IMG/VR virus record: IMGVR_UViG_3300020195_000009
Location: 1-64,000 of that record
DNA: 64,000 nt
Reading direction: 5' to 3' (one strand)
The notes beneath the pieces are model-generated. The model did not search any database. It had not been told where the DNA came from and worked only from the letters and a program-made list of their open reading frames with translations. Position numbers and translations under genes: made by a program. This document shows, piece after piece, positions 3,962 through 11,825 of this stretch. The first letter of the stretch is position 1; each line of letters opens with the position of its first letter.

Positions 3962-4231
3962 CTTTGGTGCCGGGAGTGCCGCCGCCTCGGAAGATACAAC
4001 CTCACCCCTCAACAATTCGCTGATTTACTAGAGAAACATCGGGGTATGTGCCCCCTCTGCCTCACGAGAAAGGCCGACGTGATTGATCACGACCACAGTT
4101 GCTGCTCAGGTCAACGCTCGTGTGGGGAGTGCGTCCGAGGGGTTATCTGCAAGCAGTGCAACGCAGCGTTGGGGATTCTGACTGAACAAGGGGTGAGGCG
4201 AGCAATGCTCTACTTGAGGAAGCCCAAATGA
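3962..4231 (+). pseudogene. Endonuclease VII-like (His-Me finger) domain with no start codon before its N-terminal part
   Basis: In frame from 3962: LWCRECRRLGRYNLTPQQFADLLEKHRGMCPLC...IDHDHSCC...VRGVICKQCNAALG. The first ATG (4046) lies inside the domain. Confidence 0.7.
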
Positions 4232-4893
4232 ACTGGAGAGAGGAAGCCAAGACCCGAACCCACATCCTCGGAGCTGACGAGTCGGGTTTCGGGTCCTATG
4301 CGGGGCCGCTCGTCGTTTGTGCCGCCGTCGTACCCGTCAATTGGAGCCGACCGAGGGGGCTTAACGACTCCAAGAAGATTCGGAAGGCGGAGCACGAGCG
4401 GCTCTTCTACATCCTGAAAGACGTGATCCCGTATCAGGTCGAGATGGCCCAACCGGATGAGATCGACCGGGACGGGATCATGCTCGCCCTGAAGAGGTGC
4501 TACCGTGTGGTGGTGCGGGGCTTACTGGAGCGATTCCCAGACGCCCTGGTCATCCTGGACGGTGAGGTGACCCTCCGAGCCGATGGGATTCAACACCTGA
4601 ACTTCCCAAGAGCTGACGGTGAGGTCCCTGCGGTCATGGCCGCCAGCGTCCTGGGAAAGTTCACCCACGATCGCTACATGCTCAAACTCGCTGAGGAATA
4701 TCCTGGCTACGGATTCTCAAGACACTGCGGCTATGGCACCCCAGAGCACGAAGCGGCCATCGTAAAGAAGGGCATGTGTCCGGCTCATCGACGAAGCTAC
4801 GTCCCAATGGGTAAGCTCAAGACAGCCGAGGAGATGTCTCAAGCTCATGATGAAGGGATGGTAGTTGACGACGAAGGGACTACTCCCGAGTGA
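4228..4893 (+). CDS. rnhB: Ribonuclease HII
   Basis: GADESGFGSYAGPLVV, LNDSKK, ILDG, AVMAASVLGK, YPGYGF...GYGTPEH...HRRSY. Confidence 0.9.
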   Translation: MNWREEAKTRTHILGADESGFGSYAGPLVVCAAVVPVNWSRPRGLNDSKKIRKAEHERLFYILKDVIPYQVEMAQPDEIDRDGIMLALKRCYRVVVRGLLERFPDALVILDGEVTLRADGIQHLNFPRADGEVPAVMAASVLGKFTHDRYMLKLAEEYPGYGFSRHCGYGTPEHEAAIVKKGMCPAHRRSYVPMGKLKTAEEMSQAHDEGMVVDDEGTTPE

Positions 4894-5395: not shown

Positions 5396-5818
5396 TCAGG
5401 TCAGAAACTTGAGGATGGCCTCACCAACGTCCTTGTAACCAGGCTTCTTACCTGAGTCCTTCAAGGCCTTGGTCACCCCGTCGGTGAGCTTCTTGAGGTC
5501 CTTCTTGCCCTTGTCGGACTCCAGGTACTTGCGAGCCGCCTTACCCTTGTCGGTCTTGGGTTCGGGAGCCCCGTGGAACCAATCATCGAGAGCTTCTCGG
5601 ACGTCCTTCATCCCGAACTGACCCGCACCACCCTTCTTGGCCTCAGCGCTCATCCCGTGGGAGAGGTCGCTGATCGACTTGACGTTGTCTTGGAGGAACT
5701 TGGTTACAGGATCCGACTCGGCGGCGAACCGAGTGACAACACGGCGAACTAGCGCCTCCGGGGAGGACTTGGACTTGGCGAACCGAGCCGCTACCCGTAA
5801 CGCAAGAACATCGCTCAT
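5396..5818 (-). CDS. Hypothetical Lys-rich protein with RVAARF and RVVTRF motifs
   Basis: ATG at 5818 forms an ATGA overlap with the stop of 5815..7170; begins MSDVLALRVAARFAKSKSSPEALVRRVVTRFAAE. Confidence 0.75.
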   Translation of the reverse strand: MSDVLALRVAARFAKSKSSPEALVRRVVTRFAAESDPVTKFLQDNVKSISDLSHGMSAEAKKGGAGQFGMKDVREALDDWFHGAPEPKTDKGKAARKYLESDKGKKDLKKLTDGVTKALKDSGKKPGYKDVGEAILKFLT

Positions 5819-7170
5819 GGGTTCACCCCATGCAACGCCTGGAAGAAGTCGTAGGGGCTCATCTCGGCGATCTTGGCGGCTTCCCTGAGGGTGTAGCGAT
5901 CCCGAAGATCCATGAGGGCTGCTGTCTTCGGCTCCTCCCACTCCTCAGCCGCCTTCTCCATGGCGATGTGGACCCAGGAGGGTTCCCCAGTCAGGCAGTT
6001 GGCAAGCTCTCGAATGGCCGTCGCTGCGTCAAACGTAAGCCGACCCCCGCCCCGCATACGGGTGAGGTTCTTGGGGGCCCCTTCCGAGATTTCCCACTTC
6101 AAGACCCACGGAATGAACACCCGCTCCATCTTGGTGATGGTGTCGTCCGAGAGCTGTTCCGTCTTACCGTTCACTCGGACGAAGAAGTCGTACTGATGGG
6201 CGTTGTTGATGTGCTTGAGTTTGCCTTCATCCCTCAGCTTCTTCATTCGGGTGAGGCGCTCTTTGCTGTACTTGGTGAAGACCTCGATTACGCTCTTCCG
6301 ACCGGCAACGGACGGGTCTTCATCATTGAGAAGTCCCGTGCCGACGAGGATCTCTTTGAGGCCAGCCCCACCCGACCGAGGCATCTTCTCGACGATGGCT
6401 TGGGTGGGCTTACCCCCCGGCCAAGCGAGGAACTTCTTCGGAGGCTTGGGGGAAATCCCGTCAGCCCAAGCCGTCCCAACGGTCTTCAGGTACTTCGGGG
6501 AAATCTTGGCGATGTTTTGAGCGAGGGGGACGTCCACCATGCTCGACTGCCAATCCTCTTCGACCTTGATGTACTTGCTCTCCGTATCTGTTTCTTCACG
6601 TTTCCAGTAGAAGCCCTCCCCTCGCTCCCGGAGAGCCACGAAGATGTGCTTCTGTTCCGTCTGTCCGTAGAGAACCCAAACCCTGTACCCAGGGTGGGTT
6701 GAGGAGAAGGATGACTTCGGCCAAACGAACTCAGGGATCGAGATAAACTTCCACTCCACGTTGGCAGGTGCCCCAGAGTCACCCCACGCCTTGTTGAAGT
6801 CCTGACCCTTATCCACCGCATCCGGCTCTCTCGCCTTCGGCTTCTCTCGCTTGGGAGCCGGCTCGGGGGTCGCTCGCCCCTTGCCCTCCAAGACATCCTT
6901 GGCCACGTTGATGTCGACCATCTTCTTGGGGTCACCCCCGCGATCAGGATGGTTCTCGAACGCCTTGGTTCGGTAAGCCTTCGTGACTTCCTCAGAGCTG
7001 GGGGAAGCAGTTGGAGGGAAGCCAAGAATGGTCTTGGCTTCCTGCATCGACATGGCGATGAGAAGACGAGCGTAGCGTTCCTCGAAGAACCTGGAGGCTA
7101 CCCTGTACTCGATTCGGTTGCGAAATCGAGCTACAACATGGCGTACGATTCGGATGTCGTCAGGCTGCAT
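5815..7170 (-). CDS. J-domain (DnaJ-like) protein with N-terminal HVVARF/RVASRF motifs and an unknown C-terminal region
   Basis: AKTILGF...EEVTKAYRTKAFENHPDRGGDPKKMVDINVAKDVL, with an intact HPD motif. Confidence 0.85.
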   Translation of the reverse strand: MQPDDIRIVRHVVARFRNRIEYRVASRFFEERYARLLIAMSMQEAKTILGFPPTASPSSEEVTKAYRTKAFENHPDRGGDPKKMVDINVAKDVLEGKGRATPEPAPKREKPKAREPDAVDKGQDFNKAWGDSGAPANVEWKFISIPEFVWPKSSFSSTHPGYRVWVLYGQTEQKHIFVALRERGEGFYWKREETDTESKYIKVEEDWQSSMVDVPLAQNIAKISPKYLKTVGTAWADGISPKPPKKFLAWPGGKPTQAIVEKMPRSGGAGLKEILVGTGLLNDEDPSVAGRKSVIEVFTKYSKERLTRMKKLRDEGKLKHINNAHQYDFFVRVNGKTEQLSDDTITKMERVFIPWVLKWEISEGAPKNLTRMRGGGRLTFDAATAIRELANCLTGEPSWVHIAMEKAAEEWEEPKTAALMDLRDRYTLREAAKIAEMSPYDFFQALHGVNP

Positions 7171-7214
7171 GGATAGGCGTCTCTGCTGTGGCAGCGCCTA
7201 TCAAAAGATCCCTG

Positions 7215-8498
7215 TCAGGCCTGTTTGACTTCTTGCTCCGAATTCTCATCCCGAAGAGTGTGGACCGCCTGACCCGTCTTGAGGGTTTGCTCCGTGATGA
7301 GTACCCGCTCAATCCTCGTGTCCCCAGGGAGGTCGTAGGAGAGCTGGCGAAGTGTAGACTCCACGATGGATCGAAGAGCACGAGCCCCAGTCGGGCGGGT
7401 CTTGGCTTCTTTGGCGATAGCCCGCAAGGCTTCAGGCTCAAAGTCCAGGTTCACCCCATCCATTTGGAACAAGGCCTTGAATTGCTTGACGATAGAGTTG
7501 CGAGGGTCCGTGAGAACCCGGACCATGTCATCCTCGGTCAACTCCACCGTGGTCGTGAGAACCGCCAACCGACCCATCATTTCGGGGATGATCCCGAACT
7601 CCAAGAGATCCTCTTCGGTGGTGGAAAGGTAGGTCTTGGTCTGGTCGATCTTCTCACGGGCCGAGGCTCCGAAGCCGAGACGAGACCCCTTGTTGATCCG
7701 AGCTTCCACGATGGGCTCGATCCCCGCAAACGAGCCCGCACAGATGAACAGGATGTTCGTGGTGTCGATCGTATCGTAGGCCGTCATCATACCGGCCTTG
7801 CCGGCACGAGGTACGTTGACCTTCGACCCCTCCAAGAGCTTCAAGAGCGACTGCTGGACACCCTCTCCCGTGACGTCACGGTACCCGGCTCGGTCCCGAC
7901 CACCCTTCCGTGCGATCTTGTCGATCTCATCGAGGAAGATGATGCCCCACTCCGCCCGTTGGATGTCCCCTTGAGCTTCCTGAATGAGCCCCTGGAGCAA
8001 CGTCTCTACATCATTGCCAACGTAGCCAGCTTGGGTGAGCCCCGTCGCATCCCCGACGAAGAACGGAACGTTGAGCATCCTCGCAATAGTGCGGGAAATA
8101 TGAGTTTTACCCGTGCCCGATGGACCGAGGAGAAGGATGTTGCTCTTGTCGATCTCGACGTCCTCTTTCTTGCCGTCGACTTCGATCTCGGTCTTCCCCT
8201 CCTTCGACTTTCGGCGCTTGAAGTGGTTGTAGACCGCAATGGCGATGTCCATCTTGGCCTTGTCTTGGCCGATGACGAAGTCGCTGAGGTAGGCCCGGAT
8301 TTCCTTGGGGGTCTTGAGGGCCTCTTCCTTGGCCTTGGTCTCGAAGTTTCCCTTGCGGGACCCAGCCTCCATCTCTTTGGTGGCCATCTCGACGCAGCGG
8401 TTGCAGATGAACGGACCCTCCTCAGGGTCCGCAGCAATGAGGTTTTTCACCTCGTTCCTGGGCCTTTTGCAGAAACCGCAGCAAACCGGATTGCTCAT
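7215..8498 (-). CDS. clpX: ATP-dependent Clp protease ATPase subunit ClpX
   Basis: C4 zinc finger (CGFC...ICNRC), Walker A GPSGTGKT, pore-1 GYVG, Walker B IFLDEIDK, pore-2 RDVTGEGVQQSLLK, LGF loop, sensor II GARALR. Confidence 0.95.
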   Translation of the reverse strand: MSNPVCCGFCKRPRNEVKNLIAADPEEGPFICNRCVEMATKEMEAGSRKGNFETKAKEEALKTPKEIRAYLSDFVIGQDKAKMDIAIAVYNHFKRRKSKEGKTEIEVDGKKEDVEIDKSNILLLGPSGTGKTHISRTIARMLNVPFFVGDATGLTQAGYVGNDVETLLQGLIQEAQGDIQRAEWGIIFLDEIDKIARKGGRDRAGYRDVTGEGVQQSLLKLLEGSKVNVPRAGKAGMMTAYDTIDTTNILFICAGSFAGIEPIVEARINKGSRLGFGASAREKIDQTKTYLSTTEEDLLEFGIIPEMMGRLAVLTTTVELTEDDMVRVLTDPRNSIVKQFKALFQMDGVNLDFEPEALRAIAKEAKTRPTGARALRSIVESTLRQLSYDLPGDTRIERVLITEQTLKTGQAVHTLRDENSEQEVKQA

Positions 8499-8508
8499 AC
8501 TTGATCCT

Positions 8509-8517: not shown

Positions 8518-9444
8518 TCAGGAGCCCATGAGGGCTTCAAATCGTTCGATGCGATCTTGGGCCCATTCCCCCTTGAGCCCGAAGTTTGAGATGGCGAAAA
8601 GCTCAGCAAAGGCCTCACCTTCCTTCCTACTATACTTCGAGGTCCACCACTCAGGGCGCTCAAAATCAACGGAAAGGCGGTTTTTTCGCTCATACCTATG
8701 CCCAAGCTCATGGATGAGGATGTAGTCCAGGGCTCCGTAGGTACCACTGGTTCGCTTGAGGACGTTGGGGGTGGCTCGGACGTACAGGGTATCCTCCCCC
8801 GACTTGTAGACCCCTCCTGCGGTACCTCGGAACTCCTTGGGACCTGCCAGGGCAACCTTGAGTCCCCCAAGGGCCTTCCGCCGCCACCCCTTCACTTCGT
8901 CGAAGACCGCCTCCATCGAGGTCACGTAATGGCCGATCTTCTTCTGGTCTAACCCTACAAGGTTTAGGTAGGTGTTGCCCCCTGCCTGGATTTCCTTGGG
9001 AACAATCTTGCCCCCCTCGTTCGAGAAGTACCGGACGAGGTCTCCAGCGAGGGGTTTGATCTCTGACTTCCAGAGGCGCTCCGCCTCCGCTCGGCTGTTC
9101 ACTTGAGGCATCTTGGCCCCCGAGTCTCGCAGGAACCAGTGGAATTTACTGGCTTTATCTTTGAGATCCTTCTGCCCCTGGGGGGTCTTCGGAGTCTCGA
9201 AACGGAAGTTGTCTTTGAACCACTCGGCTGTTTTAGCGGCCTCTTCGGGGATGAAGTCCGCGAAAAGGCGGTCCATCTTGGTGTTCAGCTCATCATTGAG
9301 CGTTGAACTGAACATGAACTTGGCTGCCACCCGGCGAGCCATCCGGTCCTGGTAGAAGAAGGCGACCCGCTCAACGATGTCCACGGGCTCTCGAAAGGGG
9401 GCTGATTCCGAATGACAACCCCAAGCTATTTCTAAGTCCGTCAT
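8518..9444 (-). CDS. Zincin-type metallopeptidase-domain protein with N-terminal RVAFFY/RVAAKF motifs
   Basis: LIHELGHRYE (HExxH) plus downstream EAFAELF. ATG at 9444 forms a TGATG overlap with the upstream stop. Confidence 0.75.
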   Translation of the reverse strand: MTDLEIAWGCHSESAPFREPVDIVERVAFFYQDRMARRVAAKFMFSSTLNDELNTKMDRLFADFIPEEAAKTAEWFKDNFRFETPKTPQGQKDLKDKASKFHWFLRDSGAKMPQVNSRAEAERLWKSEIKPLAGDLVRYFSNEGGKIVPKEIQAGGNTYLNLVGLDQKKIGHYVTSMEAVFDEVKGWRRKALGGLKVALAGPKEFRGTAGGVYKSGEDTLYVRATPNVLKRTSGTYGALDYILIHELGHRYERKNRLSVDFERPEWWTSKYSRKEGEAFAELFAISNFGLKGEWAQDRIERFEALMGS

Positions 9445-10223
9445 CAACTCACTTCGGCATACACAATGCAATCCGTGCTCCACACGAGGCCTTTGCAGTG
9501 AACCTTCCCACAAGGTTCAACGACGCAAACCCCACCCCCACCGAACCGATTGGGCTTGTCACCTTCTTCGCCGTAACGGTTGGATACAACAAGGAAGACC
9601 TTGTTCTCCATAGCGAAGTCCATCCAAGCAGTGGCCGGGAAGCCCCCCTCACCCCAGTTGGATGAAAACGCTACGATGTCTGCATCCCCTGGGGAGTAGA
9701 GGTTCTTCCAATCGTCATTCACCTTGTCACGAACGTCTCGACAGATAAGAAGCCCCACCTTCTTTTCAACGCCGTCGATCGTGGCTTGAACGATAGGGGG
9801 GTTGGCCCGGCCGGACTCTGCCCATAGGAAGTCATTGGCCCAGCGGTTGATCTTCCGCATGCTTTCGAGGTAACCAAAGGGATCAACGTAGACCTGGCTG
9901 TTGTACAGCTTCCCGGTTCCCGCCTCTTCCTCGATCATCCCCCACACGAGGTGGACGTTGAACTTGGAGGCTAGGGCCGCCATGAGCCTCGTTGTAGGGA
10001 TTTCGTCGTTCGCTCGGATCGCCGGCTCCAACGTGATGATCTCAGCGTCAACCCGTGCCTCTTCCGGGCTCATGTATGAATACCCAGTAGTTGCAAGCTC
10101 CGGCATCACGATAAGCTTCGCCCCCGCCCCGGCAGCCTGCTCGATGAGCTTCACAAGCCGACGCTGATTCTCACGTTTCTGACGGAAGACAGGGGCGAAC
10201 TGGATGGCTGCTACGAGGGGCAT
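9444..10223 (-). CDS. Carbon-nitrogen hydrolase (nitrilase superfamily)
   Basis: Start MPLVAAIQFAP; catalytic triad motifs VMPELATTGY (E), RKIN (K), GLLICRD (C); VVSNRYGEE. Confidence 0.9.
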   Translation of the reverse strand: MPLVAAIQFAPVFRQKRENQRRLVKLIEQAAGAGAKLIVMPELATTGYSYMSPEEARVDAEIITLEPAIRANDEIPTTRLMAALASKFNVHLVWGMIEEEAGTGKLYNSQVYVDPFGYLESMRKINRWANDFLWAESGRANPPIVQATIDGVEKKVGLLICRDVRDKVNDDWKNLYSPGDADIVAFSSNWGEGGFPATAWMDFAMENKVFLVVSNRYGEEGDKPNRFGGGGVCVVEPCGKVHCKGLVWSTDCIVYAEVS

Positions 10224-10228
10224 CGGGC

Positions 10229-10885
10229 TTACCAGTTGGAGAGTTCCTGAGCCTTGCTGCCGTCGAAGGGTACGAGGATCTTCTTCGTACGAAGCCGGTT
10301 GACACCCCACCGACGAGTCGCGACCTTGGCGGCGTCTTTGACGAGGCTAGCTTCAACCGAACTAGGGATCTTCACCCCAAACTTCGACTCGACCCAACGA
10401 AGCTCGTTTTTGACGGTATCTTGAACCGAAGGCTGACCCTTCGTGTACTTCGTCAAGATTTCAGCGACCTTCAACGAATGGTCCACGGTGTTCCCGCCCG
10501 TAGGATCGGAGCTTCCGGTCGGCTTCCAACTAGGATCAATCACAAGCCCCTCAAGCTGTTCACGCTCGGGGTTGGCCGGACGGTACGCCATCTTCTCCGC
10601 AAACATGGGGAGGATGCCGAACCGCCACGTATTGAGCCCCATGATGGCCGAGTTGATGACGTAGTTGCGTGGAGGATCCCACCACGCCCCCTGCTTGTCC
10701 TTTGCGAATCGGGACAAGTTGGCGTTGAGATAAGCCTCCATCGCTTGGTATGAAGACTCTTCCTCTTCGGCCTTAACCAGCCTCATCGCCTCGTTAGCGA
10801 GGAACAGACGCTCCGCCTGAACGAGGTGCCCGGCCTTCATGAAAGCTACAGCGAGGGAGCGGATCTCTTCGGCGGTCTTCTTCAT
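10229..10885 (-). CDS. Hypothetical protein
   Basis: Start MKKTAEEI with GGAAGGA SD upstream. Confidence 0.65.
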   Translation of the reverse strand: MKKTAEEIRSLAVAFMKAGHLVQAERLFLANEAMRLVKAEEEESSYQAMEAYLNANLSRFAKDKQGAWWDPPRNYVINSAIMGLNTWRFGILPMFAEKMAYRPANPEREQLEGLVIDPSWKPTGSSDPTGGNTVDHSLKVAEILTKYTKGQPSVQDTVKNELRWVESKFGVKIPSSVEASLVKDAAKVATRRWGVNRLRTKKILVPFDGSKAQELSNW

Positions 10886-10950: not shown

Positions 10951-11313
10951 TTAGGGGAACTGGCGATCCCAATAAGGGTCCGACGGTCCACGATAGACCC
11001 GAGGGGGCCTCAGGGTCGTTTGCATCGTGGAGATCGGAACAACCCCCTTCCGCTCTCCGATGCGGAGAGTGAAGTTACCATTTTCGTGACCTATGACGGC
11101 ACGACCCTCTGCTAGGAGGGCATCGAGAAGAGGGGTCATACTCACAAAGGAAAGACCCGCATCCATCCGAAAGTAGCGGGCTGTCCCTATGCTCACGGGC
11201 TCAAGAACATCGAGCCTTTTGAATTGAAGGCCCATCTCGTGAGCCTTCCTGATGACAGCCTCCGCAACATGAAGGTCTGCCTCCCCAGGGTGCGCTTGGA
11301 CTCCGAACCTCAT
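10951..11313 (-). CDS. Hypothetical protein
   Basis: ATGA overlap with the DHFR stop. Confidence 0.6.
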   Translation of the reverse strand: MRFGVQAHPGEADLHVAEAVIRKAHEMGLQFKRLDVLEPVSIGTARYFRMDAGLSFVSMTPLLDALLAEGRAVIGHENGNFTLRIGERKGVVPISTMQTTLRPPRVYRGPSDPYWDRQFP

Positions 11314-11825
11314 ACCCTAGTATACGTTCGATGGATCAGCGTCGGGTCGTCTGGGTTCTGCTCTTCGCTGGCGACTTTGAACCCTTCGACCTGCCCCTCC
11401 TTGAACCAGTTGAGGGTGGTGATCTTGTAGACTCCGTGCGGGTTGGGATGTTGGTACTCCTCGTTCACGAGCGTCACGTCAAGCTCATCGCAGAACTTGA
11501 GACCCTCTTCGTAGATCGAAGCGCCCCCAGCCAACCAGATCGGGGTGCCTTCCTTCCCTGCCACGAGGATGGCGTCCGCTAGCTCCGAGAAGACGGTCAC
11601 CCCATCCCAATGAGGGTGAGCATCATTCTTGGTGAGAACGAAGGTCTTGCGACCGGGTAACGGTCGGCCGATCGACTCCCATGTGACGCGACCCATGATG
11701 AGAACGCCACCCATCGTGGTCTTTTTGAATCGCTTGAGGTCCGCTGACTTCCGCCAGGGGAGTTGGCCGTCAACTCCGATGAGTCCATTGGAGCTTGTTG
11801 CCACGATGATCTTCGGTGTAGTCAT
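11310..11825 (-). CDS. folA: Dihydrofolate reductase
   Basis: NGLIGVDGQLPWRKSADLKRFKKTTMGGVLIMGRVTWESIGRPLPGR; WLAGGASIY. Confidence 0.95.
   Translation of the reverse strand: MTTPKIIVATSSNGLIGVDGQLPWRKSADLKRFKKTTMGGVLIMGRVTWESIGRPLPGRKTFVLTKNDAHPHWDGVTVFSELADAILVAGKEGTPIWLAGGASIYEEGLKFCDELDVTLVNEEYQHPNPHGVYKITTLNWFKEGQVEGFKVASEEQNPDDPTLIHRTYTRV

What the first reader, a model, noticed from the sequence alone, without database searches (positions are those of the whole stretch)
7215..8498. Phage ClpX retains the ClpP-docking and pore loops but lacks the RKH loop
Zinc-binding domain, Walker A/B, GYVG pore-1, RDVTGEGVQQ pore-2 and an LGF (IGF-type) loop are all present. Where bacterial ClpX has GGRKHP, this protein reads VPRAGKAGMM. 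Established: the RKH loop contributes to substrate and ssrA-tag recognition, and the IGF loop docks ClpX on ClpP. No clpP was seen in the window. Inference: a specificity-altered unfoldase that partners host ClpP to redirect proteolysis.
Basis: partly seen in the sequence, partly recalled or inferred. Interest (0 to 1): 0.6.

Follow-up and report, generated by a model that had tools for sequence, protein, structure and literature searches.

The report
Huge-phage ClpX with remodelled entry loops
A giant bacteriophage carries its own copy of the protein-unfolding motor ClpX that keeps the motor and the loop that docks on the ClpP protease, but has rewritten the entrance loops that choose substrates. 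The same change is shared by a whole, undescribed lineage of huge-phage ClpX genes.

Summary
Window 7215-8498 (-) encodes a 427-aa protein that passes both NCBIfam ClpX equivalog cut-offs. It has the zinc finger, Walker A/B, GYVG, RDV pore-2 core, Arg finger, sensor-II and an LGF docking loop. The RKH tripeptide is absent, but the loop itself is not: R228-K229-H230 of E. coli ClpX align to K234-A235-G236, and the loop is one residue shorter.

A second ssrA-contact residue has also changed (T199 to Y206).

This is a lineage trait. 140 unique relatives (50-81% identity) form one strongly supported branch and sit on phage contigs of up to about 530 kb with conserved gene order. All lack RKH, 135 have Tyr/Phe at the T199 position, and all keep [LIMV]GF. 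Their entry loop is Gly/Met-rich, of variable length, and the most variable stretch of the motor.

Most other phage ClpX, and 109 of 110 bacterial ClpX sampled from four phyla, keep RKH and Thr199.

No ClpP was found in the 286-kb record (60% complete) or in 13 of 15 related phage records, including two complete ones.

Best reading: an orphan unfoldase that docks on host ClpP with a changed substrate range. Binding, substrates and host are untested.

The parts
7215..8498 (-). clpX-like CDS, 427 aa (P0001), stop codon included
   Evidence: NF003745 483.9 bits and TIGR00382 452.8 bits, both above cut-off. E = 7e-109 to E. coli ClpX.
8379..8483 (-). N-terminal C4 zinc-binding domain, residues 6-40 (Cys 7, 10, 32, 35)
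   Evidence: PF06689 33.8 bits, cut-off 27. C7, C10, C32 and C35 are invariant in the 28-sequence clade alignment A1.
8103..8126 (-). Walker A GPSGTGKT (K131 = E. coli K125). Five relatives carry an intein at this site.
   Evidence: intein.
8016..8027 (-). Pore-1 loop GYVG (Y159/V160 = E. coli Y153/V154)
   Evidence: Tyr and Val are present in 140 of 140 clade sequences.
7926..7943 (-). Walker B IIFLDE (E191 = E. coli E185)
   Evidence: D190 and E191 are invariant in A1.
7851..7907 (-). Pore-2 region KGGRDRAGYRDVTGEGVQQ. It is one residue longer than in canonical ClpX. Y206 stands where E. coli has T199; V209 = V202.
   Evidence: Alignment. In the clade this position is Tyr 119, Phe 16, Ser 3, Met 2 of 140, against Thr 48, Ser 5 of 53 in RKH-type ClpX.
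7776..7814 (-). RKH-equivalent entry loop VPRAGKAGMMTAY (K234-A235-G236 = R228-K229-H230; R231 is a clade-specific Arg)
7671..7679 (-). IGF-type ClpP-docking tripeptide LGF (= E. coli I268-G269-F270)
   Evidence: [LIMV]GF is present in 140 of 140 clade sequences.
7569..7571 (-). Arg finger R310 (= E. coli R307)
   Evidence: G309 and R310 are invariant in A1.
7380..7382 (-). Sensor-II Arg R373 (= E. coli R370)
   Evidence: R373 is invariant in A1.
8518..9513 (-). Upstream ORF with HELGH plus a downstream EGEAFAE motif (putative zincin), ending 19 nt before clpX. Context gene; not shown to work with ClpX.
   Evidence: No Pfam, NCBIfam or PHROG hit. It lies between the CN_hydrolase gene and clpX in 11 of 29 clade loci. 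The motif is invariant in A2. The model is poor and its fold matches are not significant.
9444..10310 (-). Carbon-nitrogen hydrolase (nitrilase superfamily) gene, the conserved upstream neighbour of clpX
   Evidence: PF00795 93.2 bits. tblastn finds it in 27 of the 29 clade loci.
5815..7170 (-). J-domain (HPD motif) protein gene, 44 nt downstream of clpX
   Evidence: PF00226 28.5 bits, cut-off 27.8. HPD at residue 74. Homologues lie downstream of clpX only in the closest relatives L022 and L028, weakly in L044.

Best explanation
Shown:
- The gene encodes a catalytically intact ClpX-family AAA+ unfoldase.
- It belongs to a distinct clade, not described in the papers searched, carried by uncultivated huge phages (contigs up to about 530 kb).
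- The clade keeps the ATPase, the zinc-binding domain, the pore-1 loop and the [LIMV]GF ClpP-docking tripeptide.
- Two of the three elements that read the ssrA tag in E. coli ClpX are rewritten. The RKH tripeptide is replaced by a Gly/Met-rich loop of variable length and sequence. The pore-2 Thr199 position holds Tyr or Phe.
- Most phage records carrying this clade have no ClpP.

Inferred: after infection the phage ClpX forms its own hexamer, docks through LGF on the host's ClpP, and feeds it substrates other than those the host ClpX picks (not canonical Ala-Ala-COO- tags). It thereby removes particular host or phage proteins. Which proteins these are is unknown.
For: Identity:
- Both ClpX equivalog cut-offs are passed.
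- There is a full-length match to solved ClpX structures.
- All catalytic residues map onto E. coli ClpX.

A separate clade:
- The 120 best word-search hits (56-81% identity, plus a 287-aa fragment at 97%) all lack RKH.
- 29 IMG/VR loci at 50-77% identity do too.
- In an IQ-TREE tree of 108 rows the clade is one branch, SH-aLRT 100, length 0.49.
- Clade members score 513-733 bits on the clade profile. Canonical ClpX scores 409-497.

Phage origin:
- Gene order is conserved: NT5C, thymidylate synthase, DHFR, CN_hydrolase, clpX, RNase HII.
- Several records have terminal repeats and are 100% complete.
- No carrying contig exceeds about 530 kb.

Loop change:
- RKH is absent in 140 of 140.
- Loop length is 12-24 residues, against a fixed 14 in 52 of 53 RKH-type proteins. 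Composition is Gly 29% and Met 12.5%.
- The loop is the most variable 8-mer of the AAA+ core, 2.84 bits.
- The T199 position is Tyr or Phe in 135 of 140.
- T199 and H230 are ssrA-contact residues. Human ClpX has Leu at both and does not degrade ssrA substrates (PMC7652416).

ClpP docking kept, own ClpP absent:
- [LIMV]GF is present in 140 of 140.
- PF00574 gives no hit in the window's record.
- It hits only 2 of the 15 related clade-bearing records. Both hits are far below the ClpP cut-offs, 93 and 76 bits against 249.
- There is none in the complete relatives G003 and G004; G004's ClpX is 74% identical to this one.
- By contrast, 3 of 4 RKH-type jumbo-phage records have a ClpP hit, two of them full length.

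In-silico docking of residues 62-335 on three copies of E. coli ClpP gave weak support:
- Median score 0.43, best control 0.11.
- The mark was reached by 51 of 78 solved complexes and by 2 of 108 mismatched pairs.
- At 0.60 or under it was reached by only 5 of those 78, and by all 4 mismatches that passed (of 180).
- The runs agree in at least 67% of contacts, and the partner's pLDDT is at least 70.
Against: - No binding, degradation or expression data exist.
- The docking pass is weak and may come from memory of solved ClpXP structures.
- The host, and therefore its ClpP and ClpX, is unknown.
- The window's record is only 60% complete, so a clpP gene in the missing part is not excluded.
- Two distant clade-bearing phages do carry a divergent S14 peptidase.
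- The entry loop keeps a net positive charge (+1.8 against +1.6) and Lys or Arg at the R228 position in 81%. Loss of recognition of C-terminal tags is therefore inferred by analogy with human ClpX and E. coli mutants, not shown.
- ClpX also has ClpP-independent remodelling roles.
Confidence: 0.5

Rival explanations
1. ClpP-independent remodeller. The phage ClpX works alone as an unfoldase or disassembly chaperone, as ClpX does on the Mu transpososome. It might act together with the neighbouring J-domain protein and host DnaK, in replication, virion assembly or protein quality control for a very large proteome.
For: - No ClpP is found in most clade-bearing phages.
- A J-domain protein gene lies 44 nt downstream in the window and in its two closest relatives.
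- Iyer et al. [quoted passage not shown]
- The Atu_ph07 authors proposed a role in regulating replication (PMC6102473).
Against: - [LIMV]GF is kept in 140 of 140 sequences, although the residues around it vary. In established ClpX biology this tripeptide is known only for ClpP docking.
- The J-domain neighbour is confined to the closest relatives (3 of 29 loci).
Confidence: 0.22
2. ClpP decoy. The phage ClpX occupies the docking clefts of host ClpP without delivering the usual substrates. It thereby blocks host ClpXP/ClpAP proteolysis of phage proteins, or stress and defence responses that depend on ClpP.
For: The docking loop is kept while the tag-reading residues are changed. There is no phage ClpP.
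Against: Walker A/B, the Arg finger, sensor-II and pore-1 Tyr-Val are invariant across the clade. This points to selection for ATP-driven translocation, which a simple plug would not need.
Confidence: 0.1
3. Self-contained phage ClpXP. A phage clpP gene lies in the roughly 40% of this genome that is missing, and the ClpX works with it.
For: - The record is 60% complete.
- Phage G has adjacent clpP and clpX.
- 3 of 4 RKH-type jumbo-phage records hold ClpP somewhere in the genome.
- Two distant clade members hold an S14 peptidase.
Against: - No PF00574 hit in complete G004 (407 kb, terminal repeats, ClpX 74% identical) or in complete G003.
- None in G005 (79% complete), G006 (76%), G009 (94%), G010 (87%), or in the seven further records at 44-76% completeness.
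- The two hits that exist score 93 and 76 bits against the ClpP subfamily cut-off of 249, and they do not match the N-terminal part of the model.
Confidence: 0.08
4. Split FtsH-like protease. The ClpX feeds the HExxH protein encoded 19 nt upstream instead of ClpP.
For: The two genes are tightly adjacent on one strand, with no terminator-like site between them. The HExxH...E motif is invariant in seven homologues. The weak top fold matches are gluzincin peptidases.
Against: - The gene is present in only 11 of 29 clade loci.
- The model is of low confidence (pLDDT 62) and no fold match reaches E < 0.09.
- No ClpX family member is known to dock on a zincin.
- Retention of the IGF loop points to ClpP.
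Confidence: 0.05

Closest known systems
Bacterial ClpX (E. coli ClpX, PDB 8e91/6wrf; NCBIfam NF003745, TIGR00382)
   Same: - Same length and domain order: C4 zinc finger, then large and small AAA+ domains.
- Walker A/B, pore-1 GYVG, RDV pore-2 core, IGF-type loop of the same length, Arg finger and sensor-II are all present.
- Both equivalog cut-offs are passed.
   Different: - Only 40-48% identical to 110 bacterial ClpX sampled.
- RKH is replaced by KAG in a Gly/Met-rich variable loop.
- Thr199 is replaced by Tyr.
- Pore-2 is one residue longer.
- Arg stands at the Q225 position.
- Pore-1 context is TQAGYVG where nearly all canonical sequences have TEAGYVG.
- The gene is encoded by a phage and has no clpP partner gene.
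ClpX of cultivated or named jumbo phages (Bacillus phage G gp258, Prevotella Lak phages, Agrobacterium phage Atu_ph07 gp2, Sinorhizobium phage Phosso)
   Same: ClpX genes carried by phages of 470-550 kb. Function is untested, and the literature describes phage ClpXP homologues as of unknown function (PMC12707154; PMC7824862).
   Different: - These are 41-45% identical to the window's protein.
- They keep canonical loops: GGRKHP in phage G and Lak-B2, GGRKNP in Atu_ph07 and Phosso, with Thr or Ser at the T199 position.
- Phage G has clpP immediately upstream.
- RKH-type IMG/VR phage ClpX lie outside the clade in the tree.
Mitochondrial CLPX (human CLPX, PDB 9ykx/9dvy)
   Same: [quoted passage not shown] Transplanting the E. 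coli pore-2 and RKH loops restores that activity (PMC7652416). It is a precedent that exactly these two positions set tag specificity while ClpP docking is kept.
   Different: - It is a much weaker sequence match: 263 bits over residues 106-394, against 367 bits for E. coli ClpX.
- It has different residues at the two positions (Leu/Leu against Tyr/Gly).
- There is no evidence of common descent of the loop change.
Extra ClpX paralogues of Myxococcus xanthus (ClpX2, ClpX3)
   Same: [quoted passage not shown]
   Different: ClpX3 also lacks the N-terminal domain, which the phage clade keeps.

Membership tests
[quoted passage not shown] | Score above the curated equivalog cut-offs | tested here: met
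   NF003745 483.9 bits against 359; TIGR00382 452.8 bits against 370.75.
[quoted passage not shown] | N-terminal C4 zinc-binding domain | tested here: met
   PF06689 33.8 bits against 27, residues 6-40. The four Cys are invariant in the clade alignment.
[quoted passage not shown] | AAA+ module with Walker A Lys, Walker B Glu, Arg finger and sensor-II Arg | tested here: met
   K131, E191, R310 and R373 align to K125, E185, R307 and R370 and are invariant in A1.
[quoted passage not shown] | Pore-1 GYVG loop | tested here: met
   G158-Y159-V160-G161. Tyr-Val is present in 140 of 140.
[quoted passage not shown] | RKH motif in the entry loop (described as unique to the ClpX family, PMC12383707) | tested here: not met
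   K234-A235-G236 aligns to R228-K229-H230. RKH is absent in 140 of 140 clade members and present in 109 of 110 bacterial ClpX sampled.
[quoted passage not shown] | Pore-2 ssrA-contact residues Thr199 and Val202 | tested here: not met
   V209 matches V202, but Y206 replaces T199. In the clade the T199 position is Tyr or Phe in 135 of 140; bacterial ClpX have Thr in 109 of 110.
[quoted passage not shown] | IGF-type tripeptide loop for ClpP docking | tested here: met
   L274-G275-F276 sits in a loop of the same length as in E. coli. LGF also occurs in bacterial ClpX, for example 13 of 29 Acidobacteriota.
[quoted passage not shown] | Physical binding to ClpP and ClpP-dependent degradation | tested here: inconclusive
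   Complex prediction with three copies of E. coli ClpP gave weak support: 0.43 against a best control of 0.11. A pass at 0.60 or under was reached by 5 of 78 solved complexes and by all 4 mismatches that passed.
[quoted passage not shown] | Recognition of ssrA-tagged substrates | not testable with these tools
   Only inference from changed contact residues is available.
Huge-phage RKH-less ClpX clade (defined here) | Falls inside the clade branch; high score on the clade profile | tested here: met
   SH-aLRT 100 for the 46 clade rows, including the window's protein. Clade members score 513-733 bits on the profile, against 409-497 for canonical ClpX.
Huge-phage RKH-less ClpX clade (defined here) | Loop signature P-R-x-G-[KR] without His, Tyr/Phe before RDV, TQAGYVG | tested here: met
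   The protein has P230-R231-A232-G233-K234, Y206 and TQAGYVG.
Huge-phage RKH-less ClpX clade (defined here) | Conserved gene order with a CN_hydrolase gene upstream, inside a nucleotide-metabolism block | tested here: met
   In the window: CN_hydrolase at 9444-10310, DHFR at 11310-11825, RNase HII at 4228-4893. CN_hydrolase is found in 27 of 29 clade loci.
Mitochondrial-type CLPX | Closer in sequence to eukaryotic CLPX than to bacterial ClpX | tested here: not met
   263 bits over residues 106-394 to human CLPX, against 367 bits full-length to E. coli ClpX.

The most novel reading that the evidence does not exclude
The Gly/Met-rich entry loop, variable in length and sequence, together with the pore-2 Tyr, is a fast-evolving substrate-selection module. 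Huge phages would use it to aim the host's own ClpP at host-specific targets such as defence or regulatory proteins. That would make this clade a phage counter-defence or host-takeover device built from a housekeeping unfoldase, with the loop diversifying as hosts change.
Probability: 0.15. Interest if true: 0.85.

Novelty: new variant of a known kind. Interest (0 to 1): 0.55.

Why it matters
Phage-encoded ClpX genes have been noted in jumbo phages, but their function is unknown (PMC7824862, PMC12707154). I found no paper in the library that examines their substrate-entry loops.

The sequences here make a natural experiment. At least 140 distinct sequences hold the motor and the ClpP-docking tripeptide fixed. 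The two tag-reading positions that also separate human from bacterial ClpX are replaced, and the entry loop is left free to vary.

If the protein does dock on host ClpP, these phages reprogramme a central bacterial protease by supplying only its specificity subunit. That can be tested directly with standard ClpXP assays. For AAA+ protease research, the clade offers a ready-made set of natural entry-loop variants for studying how these loops set specificity and aid unfolding.

Tried and rejected
- Megablast of window 1-25000 against deposited phages: no match. The nearest DNA polymerase is 32% identical, in an uncultured 485-kb phage. The lineage has no close deposited relative.
- The genome-contig scan with the single protein used poorly conserved peptides. 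It returned only canonical ClpX at 43-45% identity, so it says nothing about clade members in bacteria. It was replaced by profile searches of 204 genomes from four phyla. None scored above 497 bits. This is a sample: 'not found in those searched', and other phyla, including the unknown host's, were not searched.
There is therefore no read or expression evidence, and read laying was not used.
- ClpS, SspB and Lon_C: no hit in the 286-kb record. No tmRNA was found by ARAGORN, so the idea of a phage tmRNA tag co-evolving with the loop has no support in the sequence held.
- The idea that the loop change removes the positive charge of the entry ring is rejected: net charge is about the same.
- The ClpP-like genes of two distant relatives (L098, L099) have no homologue in the window's record. 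They fall below all ClpP and head-maturation-protease cut-offs, so they were not taken as the missing partner.
- The upstream HExxH protein: the AlphaFold2 model has pLDDT 61.9 and no Foldseek match below E = 0.09. No function is assigned.
- The large representative-protein search was not run. The word search, family scans and IMG/VR scan left the protein's identity in no doubt.
- The 438-aa ORF at 7188-8504 (+) is the antisense frame of clpX in 58% G+C DNA. It was rejected as a gene.
- The complex-prediction result is weak support only and is reported as such.
Full report
**1. What is at the coordinates**

Window 7215-8498 on the minus strand is a 427-aa ORF (P0001). It has an ATG start and an AAGGA ribosome-binding site 8 nt upstream. 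It scores 483.9 bits on the NCBIfam ClpX equivalog NF003745 (cut-off 359) and 452.8 bits on TIGR00382 (cut-off 370.75). Pfam finds the ClpX C4 zinc finger, AAA_2 and the ClpB_D2-small domain. phmmer aligns residues 6-410 to E. coli ClpX (PDB 8e91) at E = 7e-109.

The 438-aa ORF on the opposite strand (7188-8504) is the antisense frame of a 58% G+C gene, not a gene.

**2. Residue map and a correction**

The E. coli alignment gives these pairs, E. coli first:

| E. coli | Window protein |
|---|---|
| K125 | K131 |
| Y153 / V154 | Y159 / V160 |
| E185 | E191 |
| T199 | Y206 |
| V202 | V209 |
| Q225 | R231 |
| R228 / K229 / H230 | K234 / A235 / G236 |
| I268 / G269 / F270 | L274 / G275 / F276 |
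| R307 | R310 |
| R370 | R373 |

The loop is therefore not deleted. It is one residue shorter, has lost the Lys-His part of the motif, and keeps a basic residue where R228 stands.

Cryo-EM and mutagenesis name six residues as the ssrA-tag contacts: Y153, V154, T199, V202, R228 and H230. Human ClpX has Leu at the T199 and H230 positions and does not degrade ssrA substrates unless the E. coli loops are transplanted (PMC7652416). The window's protein differs from canonical ClpX at those same two positions.

**3. It is a phage gene**

The window is the first 64 kb of an IMG/VR virus record of 286,005 bp. The record is linear and 60% complete by CheckV. The window also holds a phage DNA polymerase, a helicase, a baseplate-wedge protein and tail proteins. 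The record has no near relative among deposited phages.

**4. The loop change is a lineage trait**

- The 120 best word-search hits (56-81% identical, plus a 287-aa fragment at 97%) all lack RKH.
- An IMG/VR scan with a clade alignment returned 29 further loci at 50-77% identity, on phage contigs of 83-529 kb. Several of these have terminal repeats and 100% completeness.
- Three context look-ups and those 29 loci show the same gene order as the window: NT5C, thymidylate synthase, DHFR, CN_hydrolase, clpX, RNase HII.
- No carrying contig exceeds about 530 kb.

Across 140 unique clade sequences:
- None has RKH.
- The loop between P230 and D242 is 12-24 residues long. It is 14 in 52 of 53 RKH-type proteins.
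- The loop is 29% Gly and 12.5% Met.
- It is the most variable 8-mer of the AAA+ core.
- The T199 position is Tyr 119, Phe 16.
- The R228 position is Lys 63, Arg 51.
- Arg at the Q225 position is nearly fixed, 134 of 140.
- Net loop charge is about the same as in canonical ClpX, +1.8 against +1.6.
- Pore-1 Tyr-Val and the [LIMV]GF tripeptide are kept in 140 of 140.

In a maximum-likelihood tree of 108 rows the clade is one branch, with SH-aLRT 100 and length 0.49. It is separate from the bacterial ClpX and from all other phage ClpX sampled.

**5. Others keep the canonical loops**

- Of the 54 other IMG/VR phage ClpX loci (39-46% identical), 42 keep [RK]KH. The other twelve have variants such as GRKTP, RKNP or NKKLGM.
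- Phage G and Lak-B2 have GGRKHP. Atu_ph07 and Phosso have GGRKNP.
- I searched 204 species-representative bacterial genomes from four phyla with the clade profile. The best score was 497 bits. Clade members outside the profile score 513-733 bits, median 686.
- Of 110 bacterial ClpX extracted from those searches, 109 have RKH and 109 have Thr at position 199. The exception is a second, divergent paralogue in one Negativicutes genome.
- One genome (G164, locus L150) is flagged as unpublished.
- These are samples of four phyla. The host's phylum is unknown and may not be among them.

**6. ClpP**

PF00574 finds nothing in the 286-kb record. tblastn with a cyanobacterial ClpP finds nothing either. 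ClpX is the only Clp-type ATPase in the record, and no Lon, ClpS or SspB is found.

Among 15 related clade-bearing records, 13 have no hit. These include the complete G003 (512 kb) and G004 (407 kb, ClpX 74% identical), and G009 at 94% completeness.

The two hits, in G001 and G002, are 211-216-aa S14 peptidases that lie beside a metallophosphoesterase gene. They score 93 and 76 bits against a ClpP subfamily cut-off of 249. Neither has a homologue in the window's record.

By contrast, 3 of 4 RKH-type jumbo-phage records hold a ClpP hit, two of them full length at 260-267 bits. Fisher's p is 0.03, but the lineages are not independent, so this is only suggestive.

**7. Mechanism**

Shown:
- An intact ATPase and translocation apparatus.
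- A conserved ClpP-docking tripeptide.
- Changed tag-reading residues.
- No phage ClpP in most of the lineage.

Inferred: the protein docks on host ClpP and delivers a different set of substrates.

The only test of docking available was in silico. Residues 62-335 against three copies of E. coli ClpP gave weak support:
- Median score 0.43, best control 0.11.
- The mark was reached by 51 of 78 solved complexes and 2 of 108 mismatched pairs.
- At 0.60 or under it was reached by only 5 of those 78, and by all 4 mismatches that passed (of 180).
- The runs agree in at least 67% of contacts, and the partner's pLDDT is at least 70.
- A similar complex has been solved, so the pass may come from memory.

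Rivals:
- A ClpP-independent remodeller. This is favoured by the J-domain neighbour and by earlier suggestions in the literature. It is disfavoured by the 140-of-140 retention of the GF tripeptide.
- A ClpP decoy. This is disfavoured by the invariant motor residues.
- A clpP gene in the missing 40% of the genome. This is disfavoured by the complete relatives.
- A partnership with the upstream HExxH protein. That gene is present in only 11 of 29 loci, and no fold evidence supports it.

**8. Novelty**

ClpX genes in jumbo phages are on record (PMC7824862, PMC6102473, PMC12484599). A recent review calls phage ClpXP homologues 'of unknown function' (PMC12707154). RKH-less ClpX exist in mitochondria and as Myxococcus ClpX3. 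I found no paper that describes a phage ClpX clade with remodelled entry loops.

I rate it a new variant of a known kind. It is of moderate to good interest because it is large, coherent and directly testable. Its function, partner and host remain open.

**9. Limits**

- The host is unknown.
- The bacterial sample covers four phyla.
- The tree is a quick search with LG+G4 and few bacterial lineages.
- Loop-column homology inside a variable-length loop is approximate beyond the first six positions.

Noticed in passing
L022, L031, L033, L040, L043 (clpX ORFs of related IMG/VR phages); equivalent site in the window is 8103-8126: In five relatives the clpX ORF is 777-795 aa. An in-frame insert of about 350 aa splits the Walker A motif as GPSG | C...HN | TGKT. 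This is the signature of an intein (Cys start, His-Asn end, Thr at +1). The window's gene has no insert.
   Followed up: partly
G000 (own record, outside the window) 186,973-203,829; 239,885-239,962; 241,106-241,182: ARAGORN finds 45 tRNA genes in one 17-kb island. It also finds two tRNAs with anticodon CUA (amber suppressors, labelled Pyl by the program). There is no tmRNA. The window itself has no tRNA and reads well with code 11.
   Followed up: no
window 5815-7170 (-); G000 248,088-248,192 (-): A 451-aa protein with a J-domain (HPD at residue 74) lies 44 nt downstream of clpX. Homologues are found only in the closest relatives (L022 68%, L028 58%, L044 27%). A second J-domain ORF lies elsewhere in the record. 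This suggests recruitment of host DnaK.
   Followed up: partly
window 8518-9513 (-): A 331-aa ORF with an invariant HELGH...EGE.FAELFA motif (zincin-like) ends 19 nt before clpX. It has no Pfam, NCBIfam or PHROG hit. It is conserved between the CN_hydrolase gene and clpX in 11 of 29 clade loci. The AlphaFold2 model has pLDDT 62. The best fold matches are gluzincin peptidases but are not significant (E 0.1 or higher).
   Followed up: partly
window 9444-10310 (-): A nitrilase-superfamily (CN_hydrolase) gene is the near-universal upstream neighbour of clpX in the clade (27 of 29 loci). It falls below every NCBIfam subfamily cut-off, so its substrate is unknown. The pairing may be functional, or may only reflect a conserved nucleotide-metabolism block (DHFR 11310-11825, RNase HII 4228-4893).
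   Followed up: partly
L098 1390-2025 (+) and L099 1420-2070 (-) (records G001, G002): Two distant clade-bearing phages encode a divergent S14 (ClpP-like) peptidase. The Ser and His motifs are retained. The gene lies directly after a calcineurin-like metallophosphoesterase gene, not among head genes. It scores below both the ClpP and the head-maturation-protease cut-offs.
   Followed up: partly
L111 / L012 (Negativicutes MAG, genome G018): A second ClpX-like paralogue with a 534-aa open frame sits beside a canonical ClpX in the same genome. It has GRRHP instead of GRKHP, Lys at the T199 position and NGYAG instead of AGYVG in pore-1. It is a bacterial example of a diverged extra ClpX.
   Followed up: no
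window 7188-8504 (+): A 438-aa open frame runs antisense over the whole of clpX. It is a by-product of high G+C and can mislead longest-ORF gene callers; it misled my own first pass.
   Followed up: yes
H41, LR745208.1 285,026-289,891: The nearest deposited homologue of the window's DNA polymerase (32% identity, in an uncultured 485-kb phage) matches in four separate pieces over 4.9 kb. This suggests inserts such as inteins or introns in that gene.
   Followed up: no
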